Origin: Octopus bimaculoides
Lineage: Eukaryota
Direction of reading: 5' to 3'
Length of the DNA: 63,527 nucleotides
NCBI RefSeq assembly: GCF_001194135.2
Contig: NC_069003.1
Coordinates: 6,962,428-7,025,954, forward strand
Shown piece after piece: positions 49,488-58,948 of this stretch (positions are counted from its first letter, which is position 1; each line of letters begins with the position of its first letter). Made by a program: the position numbers and the translations under genes. The notes beneath the pieces are model-generated. The model made no database searches, was not told the DNA's origin, and saw nothing but the letters and a program-made list of their open reading frames with translations.

Positions 49488-49786
49488 AATAATAATAATA
49501 ATAATAATAATCCTTTCTACTGGAAGCACAAGGCCTCAAATTTGGGGGGAAGGTCTAGTCGATTACATCGAACCCCAGTACTCAACTGGTACTTAATTTA
49601 TCAACCCCGAAAGGATGAAAGGCAAAGTTGACCTTAGGGGAATTTGAACTCAGAACGTAGCGGCAGGCAACATATCACAAAACATTTTGCCCAGTGTGCT
49701 AACAATTCTGCCAGCTCGCCACCTTAGTAATAACAATAATAATAATAATAATTTCTTTATTAACCACCAAAATTTTACAAGAGATT

Positions 49787-49995
49787 GCCAGTACCGCCTG
49801 ACTGGCCTTCGTGCCGGTGGCACGTAAAAGCACCTACTACACTCTCGGAGTGGTTGGCGTTAAGAAGGGCATCCAGCTGTAGAAACTCTGCCAAATCAGA
49901 TTGGAGCCTGGTGTAGCCACCTGGTTTCACCAGTCCTCAGTCAAATCGTCCAACCCATGCTAGCATGGAAAGCGGACGTTAAACGATGATGATGA
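49787..49995 (+). mobile_element. RTE LINE 3' UTR fragment (young)
   Basis: Nearly identical to 25905-26110. Confidence 0.8.
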
Positions 49996-50423
49996 TTGAG
50001 AATGATGCAATACAATATGATGTGATGTGGAGTTACATGAAAGCATGTAAATGGTGAAAGTAATAAAATAATAATAATAATAACGATTGTTCTAACAAAA
50101 TGTCATTTTATTGATACTAACACAGATAAATAGATGTAAAATGGTTTCTAAAAAAAATCTTTTGACTTCACCTGTAATCATTTCCACACTAGAACACCTG
50201 TATTTGAGGTGAACTTTCACATCCCAGGTCCTTGGTTATCAATGTTTGTTGGCATATGGCAGTGTAGGTTTCTTTTCGTCTTTTATTTCTTTTGCCATTG
50301 AATGTTATGTATAAAAATCAATGGAAGCTTTCAGTACAATATCTCATAAAAGTGGGGTGGTAAGAAGGGGCTGACCTTGTGAGTGGATTTTGTAGATGGA
50401 AACTGAAACGCGTCATATTTGCA

Positions 50424-50462
<39 letters not shown>

Positions 50463-50927
50463 GCACACACACACACACACAAACATACATACTTGTGTGT
50501 GTGTATATATATATCTATATACTGGTGTGTATATGTATATACACACCACCACAAGCACAGACCACTTTCTGCAGCAAATTCAAAAGCAACTATATTTCAC
50601 AATTAAAACATTCCCTCGCCTCTAATCACCGCGAAAGGCTGAAAGAGACTCAAAATTAAAACGTAACCTAACTAACCCCGTTATTTTTACATCCTTTTGC
50701 CACACCATTATTCCCCCCCCCCCCGATCTTTCCACCACCCCCAGTGGCTCAGTGTCACACCCTTTGGGAACCACTGACGTAGGTCCATGTACATCCAACT
50801 TCCAATCAGGTATTTTTGTTTTCCAATTTACTTTTAGTGTTATATGCATTTGAATAGTTTCCAGAGTGCAACAATTACTACACAGCCTACTAGTATACAC
50901 TAGTGATACAGGTAAAGGCTATGCAAT

Positions 50928-51198
50928 TGTTGTATAGTGAAACTGTGTACCCCTCCCAGTAAAAAGTGGTAGGAACCAGCCATTATAAATAGACCACTAG
51001 CCAGTCGTCAAGAGAGGGTCGAGAGTCGACAGTTCTAGTTGGTGTCTTGTGGAACTATCAGCGATAGTAAGACAGAAGTAGTTAGTGTATTACTATTCCA
51101 ATATGAAGAGATACAACGGTATGCAATGACTAGTAACTATTGTGGCTACTAGTGTAAAAACAACAACTACACCAGTGGGAGGAACCCACTTTACAACA
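50928..51198 (+). mobile_element. 271-bp solo LTR with 5-bp TSD
   Basis: TGTTGTA...TACAACA terminal inverted heptamer; GCAAT at 50923-50927 and 51199-51203; TATAAATA at 50984. Confidence 0.8.
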
Positions 51199-51638
51199 GC
51201 AATATGTATTGTTATAATGAAGAATTCAACTAAATCTTCTGTTTTATTGTTCTCATAAACCTATGTATATCATTCTAAACCCCTCCTTTATTTTCACTTT
51301 TTAACCCTCACACATCTCTCTCTCTCTTCCTATCTTTCTAGATCTCCATTCACTGACCTCTCTCTATCTACGTATCCCTCTATATTTCAATCACTGATCT
51401 CTATCCATCTACCTGTATCTCACTCGTTAGCCTATACCTGTCTACCTACCTCTGTATATCTCATTCACTGACCTCTCTCTGCCAATCTCTCCCTCTTCAC
51501 TCTCCCCCTTTGTTCTCAGTCTATCAATCTACTTATTTCTCTGTCTCCCACTTTCTGTTGTCACTCTACTTACCTACCTATTTACATGTATCTATATACC
51601 TCTTTTTCTCTCTCTCTCTCTCTCTCTGTCCACTTCAG

Positions 51639-51793
51639 GTGAGCGTAATCAAGCAGTACGTCTGATAACTGTCCCTCGCTTCCAAGCAGAATGTTCCTTT
51701 GTTCTTGTCAACCTTCGAACACTTGATTGTGAGGTGATTAAGCTTCATAACGACATATCACAGACGCCAGCCAGCCCTCAAGTTGATAAATAA
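51639..51793 (+). CDS. POLD2: POLD2 exon 10 (terminal)
   Basis: ERNQAVRLITVPRF....VLVNLRTLDCEVI...* vs human EDQTVLLVTVPDF...CLVNLRSLACQPI; predicted total about 469 aa. Confidence 0.93.
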
Positions 51794-52640: not shown

Positions 52641-54297
52641 AGACTGACTGGATTTAGCTGGAATTTACAATGCACAAGTGTTTTGAGATAAATCCATTAA
52701 AACTTTGCTTGATTTTTATATTTGAAAATAAACTGACCCAAACGTTCAATACAGGTACAACTTTTTTTTGCCAACTGAGTGGAGTGGGACAAAGTAAAAT
52801 AAAGTGTCTTGCTCAAGTACGCAATGCATCGCCAGGAATTGAACTCATGACCATATGTTTGTGAGCCAAATGCCTTAACCACTAAGCCATGTGCCTTCAT
52901 AAAGTGGTTATATGTCTAGAATATTCAAAATATTTTAACAATTTTTTTTTTATGTAATTCCTATTAATATTTAGGAGTGGCCATGTGTTAAGAAGCTTGC
53001 TTCCGAACCACATGGTTTCCAGGTTCAGACCCCTTGTGTCATGTATGAAGCACCAGTTCTGTTACCATGTATAAAGCACCCATTCCAGTACTGCTTATAA
53101 AGCACCAAGTACACTCTGTAAAGCAATTGGCACTAGGAAGGGTAGGTATCCAGCTGTAGAAACTGCCAAAACAAACAACTAGTAACTGATGCAGCTCTCC
53201 AAGGGGCCAGATCCTATCAAACCCATCCAATTTATACCAGTATGGGAACCAGACATCCAACATAATCATCTCTTATATACCACATATGATGATCCAGCTC
53301 TGGCTGGATTTGAACTCAGAATGCAAAGAGCTAGAACAAATATCAGAAGACAAGATATAAACTGTTGCCACCATCCCGTCAGTTCGGCCATCTACAATCT
53401 CATCATTTGTTGGCATGAAATCAAAAGCTTTCACTGTTCATATTATTTGTTACCCAATGCAAACAAAGGACACATCTGCAGCACAGTCCTTTAGTCTCTG
53501 ATCTTAATTAATCTCAAGTTAGTAAAGAGATTAAACGATGATCTTTTGTATTAAGTAAATTGATTCTTTAAATCTTTATAATTACAGTAATTGGCACAAA
53601 TTCTTTACTGAACACTTTCAAGACAAAAACCAAAACAGTAACAACCACCACCATCACCATGGTTGAGAACCACATTCTGTATGTTTCAATTTATGCAAGT
53701 TAATACATGAAAAGCAAAATAGGAATTTTGAAAGTTTCTTTGAAACTAGTTTTTAAATATCCAATGGGCCCAGAATAAAATAGTAATCAAAGGGGTGCTT
53801 AGATGAAAAAAAATGGTGGAAAATCCCTAATCTGCACTGTTACACCAAAAAAGTAGTAAAGTCCTTCTCCATCCATCTCTCTGCTCTCCCTACTTAAGAA
53901 TGGGTGGAGGAGTCTAACATGGAAGGAGGAACAAAAAAAAGAAAAAGACTAATATTTGATAGTTTGTCAAGATTTATTAATGTTTTATGTCCAAGGAGGG
54001 GAGTGGATTAGCGATTTATTTAATCAACATCACAGATTAACTCCCAGTGATTGGCCACAGCAGCAGTAAGTAGTGGTGGCGATGGTAGTAGTAGCAGCAG
54101 CAGCAGCAGCTATACTAACACCACTGTTAAAGACACTGCACCATTCATTATTTCAGGACACAACATTTCAAAACAATCAGCTTCGATCACTTTTGTGTTT
54201 CCTTGTCACGAAAAAAATTCTCTTTTCAATTCCAGTGTCACTTTGTTAACATTTAAAAACAGAAACACAAACACCAACACACACATATACATATACA

Positions 54298-54449
54298 ATG
54301 GGAGGCCCTGGAGGAAAAAAGCCCCCGAAAGATCCGGATGAGGAAGAAGATGACCCCATGAACAACCCTGAACTTGTGAAGATAATTATTGGGCAATTTA
54401 AATACCAATTAAAAATGGACAGGATGATGGTCTCAGAATCTATCAAGCT
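54298..54449 (+). CDS. Heterotrimeric G-protein gamma subunit, exon 1
   Basis: MGGPGGKKPPKDPDEEEDDPMNNPELVKIIIGQFKYQLKMDRMMVSESIK(L); KYQLxMxR..xS is characteristic of the G-gamma13/G-gamma30A-type GGL domain; donor CT/GTAAGT, phase 2. Confidence 0.8.
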
Positions 54450-55369
54450 GTAAGTAAATGATGGTATTTGTTTGTGTCTGTAGGAAATAGGGGTTAGTTA
54501 TAATCAGTATAAATGTGGTCTGTGACCTTTGGAATGCAGTTGGGGTCTTCTGCAGATGTCAATTTTGGGTATGCAGTGTGAACTTTAACTAACACTCCAT
54601 CGGTTAAGAAAATAAGAGCTCCAGTTGATACGATCAATAGAACAGTCTGCTTGTTAAATTAGCATACAAGTGGCTAAGTACACCACAGACACGTGTACCC
54701 TTAACGTAGTTCTAAGGGAGATTCAGTATGACAAGCGTGGCCCTTTAAAATACAGGCCCTGTTCATTTTTGCCTGCTGAGTGGAGTGGAGCAAAGTGAAT
54801 TAACTGGTACTCCATCAGTTATGACAATGAGCGTTCCAGTTGATCCAATCAACAGAGCAGACATATGCACACACACACACGCACAGTATAGGAATGGCTG
54901 TGTGATAAATAGCTTGCTTACCAACCGCATAGTTCCAAGTTCAGTCCCACTACGTGGCATCTTGGGTAAGTGTCTTGTACTATAGCCTCGGGCCAACCAA
55001 AGCCTTATGAGTGGATTTGGTAGACAGAAACTGAAAGAAGCCCATCGTTTATATGTGTTTGTATGTCAACGTTTGTCACCCTGACATCGCTTGATAACCA
55101 ATGCTGGTGTGTTTACTTAGCAGTTCGGCAAAAGAGACCGATAGAATAAGTACTGGGTCAATTTGACCAACTAAAGGCGGGGCTCCAGCATGGCCACAGT
55201 CAAATGACTGAAAGAATAAAAGAATATATATATTCACATATACATACATACATACATACATACACACACTCACAGAAATATATAGATTTACATATAGATA
55301 CACACAAATATATATATATATATATTTGTGTGTGTATGTATATGTAAATCTATATATATATCACTAGCC

Positions 55370-55527
55370 ACTACACATTTTTTTCTCTGTTTGTTTCTGT
55401 GTTCCTTTCTGTGGAAGAGTGTAGGCTCGAAACATTAAAGACTTTTTCACTTCCCGAGCGTTAAACTAATACATCTGTTTGTTTTCTACACCATCTGTCT
55501 TCGTCTTTTGTTTTTTTTGTGAATTCT

Positions 55528-55530
<3 letters not shown>
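55370..55530 (+). mobile_element. Penelope-pLTR-like repeat fragment with hammerhead-like motif (55405-55440)
   Basis: CTTT-CTGTGGA-A-GAGT(GTAG)GCTC-GAAA-CATT-AAAG; reverse complement of 39381-39500. Confidence 0.5.
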
Positions 55531-55570
<40 letters not shown>

Positions 55571-55850
55571 CACGCACACACATATATTTAGATATACATA
55601 TACATATCTATATGTTTATACACACACATATATATATATGTATGTATATGTACATATATGTATATATATATATATATATATGTGTATATATTTGTGTGTA
55701 TGTGTGTGTATATATGTATATCTATACATATATATGTGTATATATATATATATATTTGTGTGTATGTGTGTGTGTATATATGTATATCTATACATATATG
55801 TATGTGTGTGTGTGCGTATATATATATATATTTGTGTGTGTGTGTATATC

Positions 55851-55888
<38 letters not shown>

Positions 55889-56504
55889 TGGATGTCCTTC
55901 CTAATGCCAACCACTTGACCGAGTGTACTGGTTGCTTATTACATTGTGGCAGGCACAGGTACTCACCACGGTCATCTGTTACATGGTGCCAGCATATGTA
56001 TATGTGTGTGTTTGTGTGTATGCTGAGATCTAATTGTAGAGGGTACCTGAAGAAGGGGCAGACCCAGGAAGATGTGGGATGAAGTGTTGAGAAAGGATTT
56101 TCAGACACTGGGCCTTACAGAGGAAGTGACAAGGAACCGGGAGATGTGGTGATTTGCTGTACTTGATAAGATACCTCAAGCTAAGTAAACTCACTCTCTT
56201 CCACACCTACTGGCTTGTCCTTTACAGGTGCCGGTGCCATTTAAGAAAGCACCTGTGCCGTGCTGCATTAACGGACCTGTGCCTGTGCCACATGAATGCC
56301 CCCATTCCGGTGGCATAGCACCCAGCATACTCTGTTAAGTGGTTGGTGTTAGGAAGGGCACCCAGGCATCTAAACCATTCCACAACAGACAGTTTGAGTC
56401 TGCACAGCTCCCTGCTAGCCAGCTGCATGTCAGACCATCCAACCCATGCCAGCATGGAAAGAGGCTGCTAAACGATGATGATGATGTATATATATATATA
56501 TAGA

Positions 56505-56912
56505 TGCTGGTGTGGTTGTGTGGTAAGAAGCTTGCTTACCAACCACATGGTTCTGTGTTCAGTCACACAGCGTGGAACCTTGGGCAAGTGTCTTCTGCTA
56601 TAGACTTGGGCCAACCAAAGCCCTGTGAGTGGATTTGGTAGATGGAAACTGAAAGAAGCCTGTCATACGTATGTATATATATATGTATATGTTTGTTTGT
56701 GTGTTTTTCCCCCCCATGACCACCACCATCACTTGAAAACCAATGTTGGTGTGTTTACATCCCCGTAACTTAGCGGTTCAGCAAAAAAGAGACCGATAGA
56801 ATAAGTGCTAGGCTTACAAAGAATAAGCCCCAGGGTTGATTTCTTCGACTAAAGGCGGTGCTCCAGCATGGCCGCAGTCAAATGACTGAAACAAGTAAAA
56901 GAATAAAAGAAT
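56505..56912 (+). mobile_element. SINE family A, near full length
   Basis: Same head, central microsatellite and tail as 16870-17246; further copies at 54892-55222, 59738-60150, 60165-60605 (+) and 15560-15860, 23758-23935, 37262-37540, 38620-38985, 42600-42870, 52082-52290, 57640-57800 (-). Confidence 0.85.
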
Positions 56913-57942
56913 ATATATGAAATTATAGTTTATTTCTTTTTAATGAGTCAGACATAATCCTCTGTTTGAAGTTTCTAATTTAAGGAAGTCAATCAGGATT
57001 ATTTATTTATTTATCAACATATCCAAAATGAAAAACCAGTTTTATTTTCCCACAGTTAAAATAACTAAATCACGCAGTAAATATATCAGCTCACAAAATA
57101 TATTTATATACTGTACAAGTTGATGATCAAACCTACATTGTGGATTTTAAATAGTTCAGCTGTTGGTAGGTCAAGTTTTCAAAAATAACTAAGATCACTG
57201 GAATTAATTTGCTGTCTCTATAATGCCTTATCATTTATCTTTTACTAGTTTCGGTCACTGGATTCTGGCCATGCTGGTGCACCGTTTGGAAGGGTTTTAC
57301 TCAAATGAATTGCTTCCAGTAATTCTAACTTTTGTTGTTGTTGTTGTTTTTGTCATTTTGGGAGCAGTTTGTGCCTCTTGTTAAGGGGGTGCACACCAGA
57401 TGGCACTGTCCCCTCACTAATTCAATGGTGCAGCCTCAGATTTACTACACTTTAGCATTATTACACCAGTGATGTTGCAACTCATTTCTACAGCTGAGTG
57501 AACTGGAGCAACGTGAAATAAAATATCTTGCTCAAGAACACAACACATAGCCCAGTCCAGGAATCGAACTCACTACCTCATAATTGTGAACCCAATTCTC
57601 TAACCACCGAGCCATATGCCTTCACACACACACTCACAGCAGGCTTCTTTCAGTTTCCATCTACCAAATTTACTCACAGGGCTTTGGTTGGTCCAGGGCT
57701 ATAGTAGAAGTCCTTTGCTCAAGTTGCCATGCAGTGCAATTGAACCTTGAACCCAGTGGTTACAAAGCAAACTTCCTACCAGATCAGCCACACCTGTTCC
57801 TAGCCATATATGTAGCTTTTATGTTTCTGTGGTTTAAAATGTACAAATGCGTGACTGCAGCCCATAAACCAATGCCTTGATCTATTGTTTCTTGTTGCAA
57901 GGAATATCTTCCCTAATGCTGTCATTTTTTTCATGTTTTCAG

Positions 57943-58060
57943 GCACATGGAGAAAATTGATGAGAAAATCAAGACTGATTATATGATCCATTCTGCACCA
58001 AAATCCGAAAACATTTGGATTGACAGCGGCAACAAAAGTAGTGGATGTCTTGTATTGTAA
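57943..58060 (+). CDS. G-protein gamma subunit, exon 2 (ends in CaaX CLVL*)
   Basis: Acceptor gttttcag/, phase 2; HMEKIDEKIKTDYMIHSAPKSENIWIDSGNKSSGCLVL*; aligns with D.li..p...N.W......CaaL; 89 aa total. Confidence 0.82.
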
Positions 58061-58173
58061 GGCCGCAGAACAGCACAGAATGTTTCCAGCAAAATTACAT
58101 CAATTGGTACTCAACTGGGTTCCATATGGCCTTTGGGAGTTGTTATAAGATTTTGCTGTTAAAATTTATGCAC

Positions 58174-58179
58174 AATAAA
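58174..58179 (+). terminator. Candidate poly(A) signal of the G-gamma gene
   Basis: AATAAA 114 nt after the stop codon. Confidence 0.4.
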
Positions 58180-58948
58180 ATTTGTTATACCTCACCAATA
58201 CACAGAATATTTCAAAAATTTTTTTAGAAAATTCCTAATAATATTTAATTATAAAAACAGGTTAGTTGTCTCTAGTTCTACAAAAGGAAACCAATAATGG
58301 ATCAATAATTAATTTTAATGAGGACTACATGTTTATTGATCATGTGACTGAATTAAAACATGCTGTACAATTTCTTTTTGCACGTGAAGTAGACTATATA
58401 AACTAGTGAGTGAACACATGGAGTTTTTGGCAATATGAAGTTGGCAACGAAGACAGTTGGAGAAAAGATGTGATGTGACCAGTTGACGTGAACCAGGTGA
58501 CAAAAAACCACATTCCGTAAAGACATCCAGCCGAGTATGACCAGTTCTTCTACTCTGAGCAAGTTGGCTTGCTGGACTGGCCTGCAGTTTGCCACCTGCT
58601 GACTGTTGAAGCTGTGTTGGTGTCAGGAGGCTGCATTTTGCAACAACACTGGCTAGGAGGGTTCATTCGAATAAAATAGGAATCAAAATGGTTGAGAACC
58701 ACTAGCTAAGATTGTAAAATTATAATAACCTTAATTATGTATCTGTTTTAGTGTTTAATTAATAAAATATTATAGAGTAATTGCCTGGAAAATACAGTCT
58801 ATGATTCAGGTTCAATTCCCAGTTACTTTTCTTTTTTGTTATTTGTTTCGGTCAACCCCATTAATTATTTTTTGAGCCTAGTGGTTATTCTATTAGTCTC
58901 TTTGCTGAACTGCAAAGTTACAGGGATGTAAACACCAGTTAAACACTA

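What the first reader, a model, noticed from the sequence alone, without database searches (positions are those of the whole stretch)
54298..58060. Divergent G-protein gamma subunit with a basic/acidic N-terminal extension, missing from the ORF track
Seen: two exons with canonical splice sites join to an 89-aa protein MGGPGGKKPPKDPDEEEDDP-MNNPELVKIIIGQFKYQLKMDRMMVSESIKLHMEKIDEKIKTDYMIHSAPKSENIWIDSGNKSSGCLVL. Known: G-gamma subunits end in CaaX, and X=L directs geranylgeranylation. KYQ..M.R..xS marks the G-gamma13/Drosophila G-gamma30A (sensory) class, and the squid photoreceptor G-gamma is known for an unusual charged N-terminal extension. Inference: this is a lineage-specific paralog. The normally conserved DPL and NPW/F motifs have become DYM and NIW, so G-beta partner choice or membrane targeting may differ. 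It could be a cephalopod photoreceptor or chemosensory G-gamma.
Basis: partly seen in the sequence, partly recalled or inferred. Interest (0 to 1): 0.72.

Follow-up and report, generated by a model that had tools for sequence, protein, structure and literature searches.

The report
Octopus G-protein gamma gene, already annotated
This is a real, expressed two-exon gene for a small G-protein gamma subunit of Octopus bimaculoides that public databases already list, and it is the older sister copy of the octopus version of the squid visual gamma subunit, not that visual subunit itself.

Summary
RNA contigs from four runs of the same species carry the junction. The peptide passes Pfam's G-gamma cut-off and ends in CaaX (CLVL).

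It is not new. The identical protein is RefSeq XP_014776860.1 / UniProt A0A0L8GZF7, "guanine nucleotide-binding protein subunit gamma" of Octopus bimaculoides. It was absent from an ORF list only because the unspliced frame stops after 51 codons.

Its nearest relatives are the squid visual G-gammas (48-54% identity), then amphioxus and vertebrate GNG13. However, O. bimaculoides has a second gene of this type on another chromosome (P0010, 84 aa, same intron position). P0010 is 64-69% identical to the squid visual subunit and shares its N-terminus. Distance trees (94-97% bootstrap) and a shared 2-residue deletion place this window's gene outside the squid + P0010 + Argonauta group. It is therefore the older sister paralogue, not the visual orthologue.

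The gene is conserved: two related species hold the same spliced mRNA, and dN/dS is about 0.06. The "DYM" motif is shared with amphioxus, and squid also lacks that proline. The tissue of expression could not be determined.

The parts
54121..54297 (+). 5' untranslated part of exon 1. It has no upstream ATG and an in-frame TAA at 54247. The CA-rich tract at 54252-54297 attracts reads from elsewhere in the genome.
   Evidence: RNA contigs start at 54121 (X2), 54124 (X7) and 54150 (X3).
54298..54449 (+). Coding part of exon 1, codons 1-50 plus 2 nt. It encodes the MGGPGGKKPPKDPDEEEDDP extension and the first helix, including KYQL..R.M.SES.
   Evidence: tblastn; RNA contigs.
54450..57942 (+). Phase-2 intron of 3493 nt (GTAAGT...TTTTCAG). 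It holds high-copy interspersed repeats (about 54650-55200 and 57636-57690) and TA/ATAC microsatellites (55240-55887).
   Evidence: The intron sits at the same position and phase as in the paralogue P0010.
57943..58060 (+). Coding part of exon 2, codons 51-89 plus the TAA stop. It encodes the second helix, DYM, NIW, the KSSG insert and the CaaX box CLVL.
58061..58730 (+). 3' untranslated region. AATAAA signals lie at 58174 and 58670. Contigs end at 58186/58204 (short form) and at 58669/58730 (long form).
   Evidence: Use of the two poly(A) sites is inferred from where contigs end, not from poly(A) reads.

Best explanation
The window carries the already annotated Octopus bimaculoides gene for a G-protein gamma subunit of the GNG13-like class (XP_014776860.1).

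Inferred mechanism, from what is established for the family:
- The 89-aa product folds only together with a G-beta subunit.
- The helix from about residue 24 forms the coiled coil with the G-beta N-terminus.
- The second helix and the segment around Trp76 (NIW) pack on the beta-propeller.
- Cys86 of the CLVL box is geranylgeranylated (X = Leu), then trimmed and methylated, which anchors the beta-gamma dimer to the membrane.
- The disordered, proline/glycine-rich N-terminal extension (3 basic then 7 acidic residues) is a cephalopod feature shared in type with the squid visual G-gamma.

Evolution: cephalopods duplicated the normally single GNG13-type gene. One copy became the visual G-gamma (squid GBG_LOLFO, D. 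pealeii AAQ88308, octopus P0010, Argonauta P0011). This gene is the other copy. It split off before squids and octopods separated. It keeps several ancestral states (KYQL, DYM, full-length loop before N-x-W) and is held under strong purifying selection within Octopus.

It therefore most likely serves a G-protein pathway other than the main rhabdomeric Gq cascade, at modest expression levels. Which pathway or tissue is not known.
For: Shown by tools:
- The spliced ORF and the RNA junction.
- The Pfam G-gamma hit above the gathering score.
- The exact database identity and name, and the location on chromosome CM046623.1.
- An exhaustive phmmer search of 1.84 billion representatives finds only itself, the squid visual G-gamma cluster (E 2e-13, 50% identity) and amphioxus GNG13-like (E 8e-6).
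- A second O. bimaculoides paralogue, P0010, lies on CM046612.1 with the identical intron position and phase.
- Identity matrix: this protein against squid 48-54%, and against P0010 40%. P0010 against squid is 64-69%.
- NJ bootstrap is 94-97% for (squid + P0010 + Argonauta) excluding this protein, 99-100% for all cephalopod sequences together, and 0% for an octopod-only duplication.
- A 2-aa deletion is shared by squid, P0010 and P0011 but not by this protein, amphioxus or GNG13.
- Identity to amphioxus is 39% for this protein against 40% for P0010 and 26-29% for squid, so it is not an unusually fast branch.
- A cephalopod-only profile hits GNG13 best in the PDB: 24 bits, against 16 for transducin gamma, with gamma-2 not listed.
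- Orthologous spliced mRNAs exist in two related species. Against organism C there are 7 synonymous and 2 conservative changes (dS 0.158, dN 0.009, dN/dS 0.06).
- AF2 gives a confident helix at 24-62 and low confidence for residues 1-20.

From the literature: one GNG13 orthologue is typical per animal genome (Krishnan et al. 2015, as cited in bioRxiv 10.1101/2023.09.14.557824).
Against: - The phylogeny rests on about 85 aligned residues, a distance method and only six cephalopod sequences.
- No squid, cuttlefish, Nautilus or Argonauta orthologue of this copy was found in the protein collections. An old duplication therefore requires loss or non-annotation in those lineages.
- G-beta binding, prenylation and the non-visual role are inferred, not shown.
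- The Foldseek matches are all G-gamma chains but not significant (E >= 2.9).
Confidence: 0.8

Rival explanations
1. It is the octopus photoreceptor (visual Gq) G-gamma, the direct orthologue of the squid visual subunit, as the first reader suggested was possible.
For: The best non-self hit in the exhaustive search is the Doryteuthis pealeii visual G-gamma. The two share the charged N-terminal extension, the KLH.EKI.EK core and the KS[SG]GC insert before the CaaX box.
Against: - O. bimaculoides has another gene, P0010, that is far closer to the squid protein (64-69% against 48-54% identity) and has the same MNKLQGKKK-EEEEEREIP start.
- Bootstrap support of 94-97% excludes this protein from the visual clade.
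- The clade-defining 2-aa deletion is absent here.
- Expression is zero to very low in three deep raw-read runs, and contig depth is only 6-12 in the runs that hold it.
Confidence: 0.07
2. It is a recent, Octopus-genus-specific duplicate of the visual G-gamma that evolved quickly. On this view its basal position in the tree is a long-branch artefact.
For: It was found only in O. bimaculoides and, as RNA, in two close relatives. The annotated Argonauta proteome and the squid proteins in the collections show only the visual type.
Against: - Bootstrap support for grouping it with P0010 and Argonauta is 0%.
- It lacks the deletion shared by squid and octopod visual copies. It retains KYQL and DYM as in amphioxus, which would need reversions.
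- It is no further from amphioxus than P0010 is (39% against 40%).
- Current evolution is slow (dN/dS 0.06).
- The two copies lie on different chromosomes and both retain the intron.
Confidence: 0.12
3. It is a decaying or non-functional gene copy whose open frame is fortuitous.
For: Expression is low in the raw-read runs sampled. The canonical DPL and NPW prolines are lost.
Against: - The ORF is intact, the splice sites are canonical and the CaaX box is present.
- It is spliced and expressed in three species.
- There are 7 synonymous against 2 conservative replacement changes (dN/dS 0.06).
- The same proline losses occur in the biochemically characterised squid visual G-gamma and in amphioxus.
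Confidence: 0.01

Closest known systems
Squid visual G-protein gamma subunit (Loligo forbesii GBG_LOLFO, 87 aa; Doryteuthis pealeii AAQ88308.1, 84 aa)
   Same: It has the same architecture: a basic-then-acidic N-terminal extension, the PEL..II.Q.K.QL helix, KLH.EKI.EK, T-D-aromatic/His-hydrophobic in place of DPL, N-x-W with the proline lost, a KS[SG]G insert before the CaaX box, and a Leu-rich CaaX box. Identity is 48-54%.
   Different: - The N-terminus differs: MGGPGGKKPPKDPDEEEDDP against MNKMQGKKK..EEEEERE.
- This protein has KYQL (squid KRQL) and DYM (squid DHI).
- It has two extra residues before N-x-W.
- It lacks the extra residue in MTDIMK.
- Its CaaX box ends in Leu, where squid has CLLV.
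- It is not the orthologue. That role belongs to octopus P0010.
Octopus bimaculoides paralogue P0010 (84 aa, chromosome CM046612.1) and Argonauta hians P0011
   Same: P0010 is from the same species and has the same two-exon structure. Its phase-2 intron lies in the same Leu codon of KL|H, and intron length is similar at about 3.4 kb. It belongs to the same G-gamma class.
   Different: Identity is only 40-44%. P0010 and P0011 have the squid-type N-terminus, DHM, NPW, the 2-aa deletion and a GGGGC tail.
GNG13 (vertebrate G-gamma13) and amphioxus GNG13-like proteins
   Same: They share the LKYQL..R.M.S..I motif, Trp in N-P-W, and the length of the loop between D-x-x and N-x-W. Amphioxus also has TDYM[LI]H. 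GNG13 is the best PDB match of the cephalopod profile.
   Different: Identity is 25-31% to vertebrate GNG13 and 38-41% to amphioxus. GNG13 has no N-terminal charged extension and no KSSG insert. Vertebrate GNG13 keeps DPF and NPW.

Membership tests
Heterotrimeric G-protein gamma subunit (Pfam PF00631, G-gamma/GGL) | Match to the family HMM above the curated gathering score | tested here: met
   33.4 bits against a cut-off of 27.1, E 4.7e-8. Residues 28-89 match profile positions 9-69 of 69.
Heterotrimeric G-protein gamma subunit (Pfam PF00631, G-gamma/GGL) | C-terminal CaaX prenylation box on a free-standing protein of about 65-90 aa. This separates true gamma subunits from the GGL domains of RGS proteins. 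| tested here: met
   The 89-aa ORF ends in C-L-V-L followed by a stop. X = Leu directing geranylgeranylation is established knowledge and was not assayed.
Heterotrimeric G-protein gamma subunit (Pfam PF00631, G-gamma/GGL) | Two-helix extended fold that packs on G-beta | tested here: inconclusive
   The AF2 monomer gives one long confident helix at 24-62 (pLDDT 86-93) and a short one at 75-78. All eight Foldseek hits are G-gamma chains but with E >= 2.9. No multimer prediction was available.
Heterotrimeric G-protein gamma subunit (Pfam PF00631, G-gamma/GGL) | Obligate dimer with a G-beta subunit; prenylated in vivo | not testable with these tools
   Needs co-purification and lipid analysis.
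GNG13-like class of G-gamma | Closer to GNG13-type proteins than to the gamma-2-like or transducin-gamma classes | tested here: met
   The only non-cephalopod hit of the exhaustive search is amphioxus GNG13-like. The cephalopod-only profile scores GNG13 at 24 bits (E 3.3e-4), against transducin gamma at 16 bits, with gamma-2 above E 1. The margins are modest.
GNG13-like class of G-gamma | LKYQL...R.M.S motif and Trp in the N-P-W motif | tested here: met
   FKYQLKMDRMMVSES and NIW align with GNG13 LKYQLAFQREMASKT and NPW. The Pro of NPW is replaced by Ile.
GNG13-like class of G-gamma | D-P-[FL] motif after the second helix | tested here: not met
   The motif is DYM here. The proline is also absent in amphioxus GNG13-like (DYM), squid visual G-gamma (DHI) and P0010 (DHM). 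The feature therefore does not define the class outside vertebrates.
Cephalopod visual G-gamma (orthologues of squid GBG_LOLFO) | Being the octopus gene most similar to the squid visual subunit | tested here: not met
   P0010 is 64-69% identical to the squid proteins, and this protein is 48-54%. Bootstrap support of 94-97% excludes it from the clade.
Cephalopod visual G-gamma (orthologues of squid GBG_LOLFO) | MNK[LM]Q-polyK-polyE-REIP N-terminus and the 2-residue deletion before N-x-W | tested here: not met
   The N-terminus is MGGPGGKKPPKDPDEEEDDP and the loop is full length (SAPKSEN).
Cephalopod visual G-gamma (orthologues of squid GBG_LOLFO) | Abundant expression in retina / rhabdomeric photoreceptors | not testable with these tools
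Depth is low wherever it was measured.

The most novel reading that the evidence does not exclude
This copy may be a doubly lipidated G-gamma. Its N-terminus, MGGPGGK, fits the N-myristoylation pattern (PROSITE PS00008). The visual-type paralogues, squid proteins and amphioxus proteins do not fit it. The motif is conserved through synonymous changes in two related species. Together with the geranylgeranyl CaaX box, this would give a beta-gamma dimer with two membrane anchors. It could serve a non-visual sensory pathway, such as chemotactile or dermal light sensing, in octopods. The pattern is very permissive, and no tissue or lipid data support the idea.
Probability: 0.08. Interest if true: 0.5.

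Novelty: already known. Interest (0 to 1): 0.17.

Why it matters
It matters little beyond annotation hygiene, because the gene model, its product and its family name are already in RefSeq and UniProt.

The one useful increment concerns copy number. Octopus carries two genes of the normally single-copy GNG13 type, and the one in this window is not the counterpart of the biochemically studied squid visual G-gamma. Anyone transferring "visual G-gamma" function to octopus by best hit from this locus would pick the wrong gene. Anyone studying cephalopod sensory G-protein signalling has a second, conserved beta-gamma component to place.

Tried and rejected
- A word-indexed search with the single protein found only the protein itself.
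- The widened profile search was flooded by vertebrate GNG13 and added no mollusc sequences. The unnamed hits I inspected were all vertebrate GNG13 fragments.
- Tissue identity of the runs is coded and could not be recovered.
- Literature searches for the accession and for cephalopod G-gamma expression gave nothing specific.
- Biopython's rooted support values were meaningless. I replaced them with explicit bipartition counts.
- tblastn of the octopus, squid and amphioxus proteins against the window found no tandem copy or extra exon.
- The AF2 monomer plus Foldseek search gave only non-significant G-gamma matches.
- I considered an alternative start at Met21, which would give a 69-aa product of typical G-gamma length. 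I rejected it as the main product. ATG 54298 is the first ATG of the mRNA, it is in good context, and codons 3-4 change only synonymously between species.
Full report
**1. The observation**

- An ATG at 54298 opens 152 coding bases that end at 54449, directly before GTAAGT.
- A polypyrimidine tract and CAG end at 57942, and exon 2 runs from 57943 to the TAA at 58058-58060.
- Joining the two exons gives a 270-nt reading frame. Its translation is identical to the 89-residue peptide in the finding.
- The intron is 3493 nt and splits the Leu51 codon, CT|G.

This is not only a paper splice.
- RNA contigs from four runs of the same organism (X1, X2, X3, X7) continue from 54449/54450 straight into 57943. 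At 57943 the loose end reads ...CAGGATGATGGTCTCAGAATCTATCAAGCT, which is the end of exon 1.
- One 1056-nt contig covers 54121-54450 plus 57943-58669.
- The 177-nt leader has no ATG and has an in-frame TAA at 54247, so 54298 is the first start codon.
- Read unspliced, the frame stops after 51 codons at a TAA overlapping the donor. That is why a plain ORF list does not show the gene.

**2. What it is**

- The peptide passes Pfam's curated threshold for the G-gamma/GGL domain: PF00631, 33.4 bits against 27.1, covering residues 28-89.
- It ends in the CaaX box CLVL.
- The identical sequence is already public as XP_014776860.1 / UniRef A0A0L8GZF7, "guanine nucleotide-binding protein subunit gamma", Octopus bimaculoides. 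It lies on chromosome record CM046623.1 at 7,016,725-7,020,487.
- The gene is therefore annotated. No paper in the searchable library mentions the accession.

**3. Relatives**

- An exhaustive phmmer scan of 1.84 billion cluster representatives gave three hits at E <= 0.001. These were the protein itself, the cluster of the Doryteuthis pealeii "visual GTP-binding protein gamma subunit" (E 2e-13, 50% identity), and amphioxus "gamma-13-like" (E 8e-6).
- A profile search added three proteins. These were Loligo forbesii GBG_LOLFO, an Argonauta hians protein, and a second O. bimaculoides protein, P0010 (84 aa), encoded on a different chromosome, CM046612.1.
- P0010 has the same phase-2 intron in the same Leu codon of K-L|H and a similar intron length. 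The two are therefore ordinary intron-bearing paralogues, not a retrocopy pair.
- A cephalopod-only profile matches GNG13 best among solved structures: 24 bits, E 3.3e-4. Transducin gamma scores 16 bits and gamma-2 does not appear at E <= 1.
- A preprint citing Krishnan et al. 2015 states that animals typically have one GNG13 orthologue. Octopus therefore has one more than usual.

**4. Which paralogue is the "visual" one**

- P0010 starts MNKLQGKKKDEEEEEREIP, almost letter for letter like the squid visual subunits. It is 64-69% identical to them. The window's protein is 48-54% identical to squid and 40% to P0010.
- In neighbour-joining bootstraps with three distance models, squid + P0010 + Argonauta form a group that excludes the window's protein in 94-97% of 500 replicates. 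All cephalopod sequences group together in 99-100%. An octopod-only grouping of the two octopus paralogues never appears.
- Independently of distances, squid, P0010 and Argonauta share a two-residue deletion before N-x-W. The window's protein, amphioxus and GNG13 lack it.
- The window's protein also keeps KYQL and DYM as in amphioxus.
- It is no further from amphioxus than P0010 is (39% against 40%), so a long-branch artefact is not the obvious explanation.

The best reading is that the duplication preceded the squid-octopod split. P0010 is the visual orthologue, and this gene is the sister copy.

There are three caveats. The alignment has only about 85 columns, a distance method was used, and no squid or Argonauta counterpart of this copy appeared in the collections. 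Such a counterpart would have to be lost or simply unannotated.

**5. Is it functional**

- RNA contigs of two related species (coded B and C) carry the same spliced message.
- Across the full coding sequence, species C differs at seven synonymous sites and two conservative replacement sites (F34L, M65I). This gives dS 0.158, dN 0.009 and dN/dS 0.06.
- That rules out a decaying copy. It also supports translation of the N-terminal extension, because codons 3 and 4 change only synonymously.
- No editing-like differences were seen in the exons in the same-species runs.
- Expression is modest wherever it could be measured. Contig depth is 6-12 in the runs that hold it. In three deep raw-read runs, two show no reads on exon 2 and one shows a depth of 2-4.
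The tissue question therefore stays open.

**6. Mechanism (inferred from the family)**

- The confident helix from residue 24 to 62 corresponds to the two G-gamma helices that bind G-beta. In solved complexes these are kinked.
- Trp76 takes the place of the Phe/Trp of NPF/NPW.
- Cys86 is the prenyl acceptor, with Leu at X directing geranylgeranylation.
- Residues 1-20 are predicted with low confidence, are rich in Pro and Gly, and run basic then acidic, as in the squid protein.
That argument is weakened because the DPL proline is absent from every member of this group, including the squid visual subunit and amphioxus. Squid also lacks the NPW proline.

**7. Speculative extra**

Uniquely among the relatives examined, this protein starts Met-Gly and fits the permissive PROSITE myristoylation pattern. 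I record this as the most novel reading not excluded, at low probability.

**8. Verdict**

It is partly wrong about novelty, the significance of the motifs and the photoreceptor candidacy. The feature is an ordinary, already annotated gene. The only added value is the paralogue assignment.

Noticed in passing
window 54650-55200 and 57636-57690 (inside the intron): Short interspersed repeat copies have enormous RNA contig depth (10^3-10^5) in every run of three species. They show many A>G differences relative to the window. These could reflect divergence within a high-copy repeat family or A-to-I editing of repeat transcripts.
   Followed up: no
window 58196-58257 (3'UTR): A roughly 60-nt segment of the 3'UTR behaves as a repeated element. 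Its depth is 100-1000 in other species' runs and in X26, with many unrelated flanks.
   Followed up: no
window 58174 and 58670: Two AATAAA signals coincide with two sets of contig ends (58186/58204 and 58669/58730). This suggests short and long 3'UTR forms.
   Followed up: partly
L002 10001-13589 (O. bimaculoides CM046612.1:43,920,999-43,924,587): This is the second GNG13-type G-gamma gene of the same species (P0010, 84 aa), with the identical intron position. It is the likely true orthologue of the squid visual G-gamma. An adenosine/AMP-deaminase-domain gene lies about 7 kb downstream.
   Followed up: partly
window 16251-16837: Long open frames on both strands are made of a perfect short-period repeat (GQLPT/GQLPA units on one strand). 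This is a minisatellite, not a gene.
   Followed up: no
window 1253-60340 (15 runs of N, 4322 bases in all): Assembly gaps are scattered through the window and are mostly flanked by TA/CA microsatellites. None lies inside the G-gamma gene.
   Followed up: no
window about 44298-51793, + strand (L001 1-7496): The public gene calls place the 3' part of a 470-aa product with no Pfam hit upstream of the G-gamma gene. A poly(A)-binding-protein-like gene (RRM_1, MLLE) lies on the minus strand beyond the window's right end.
   Followed up: no
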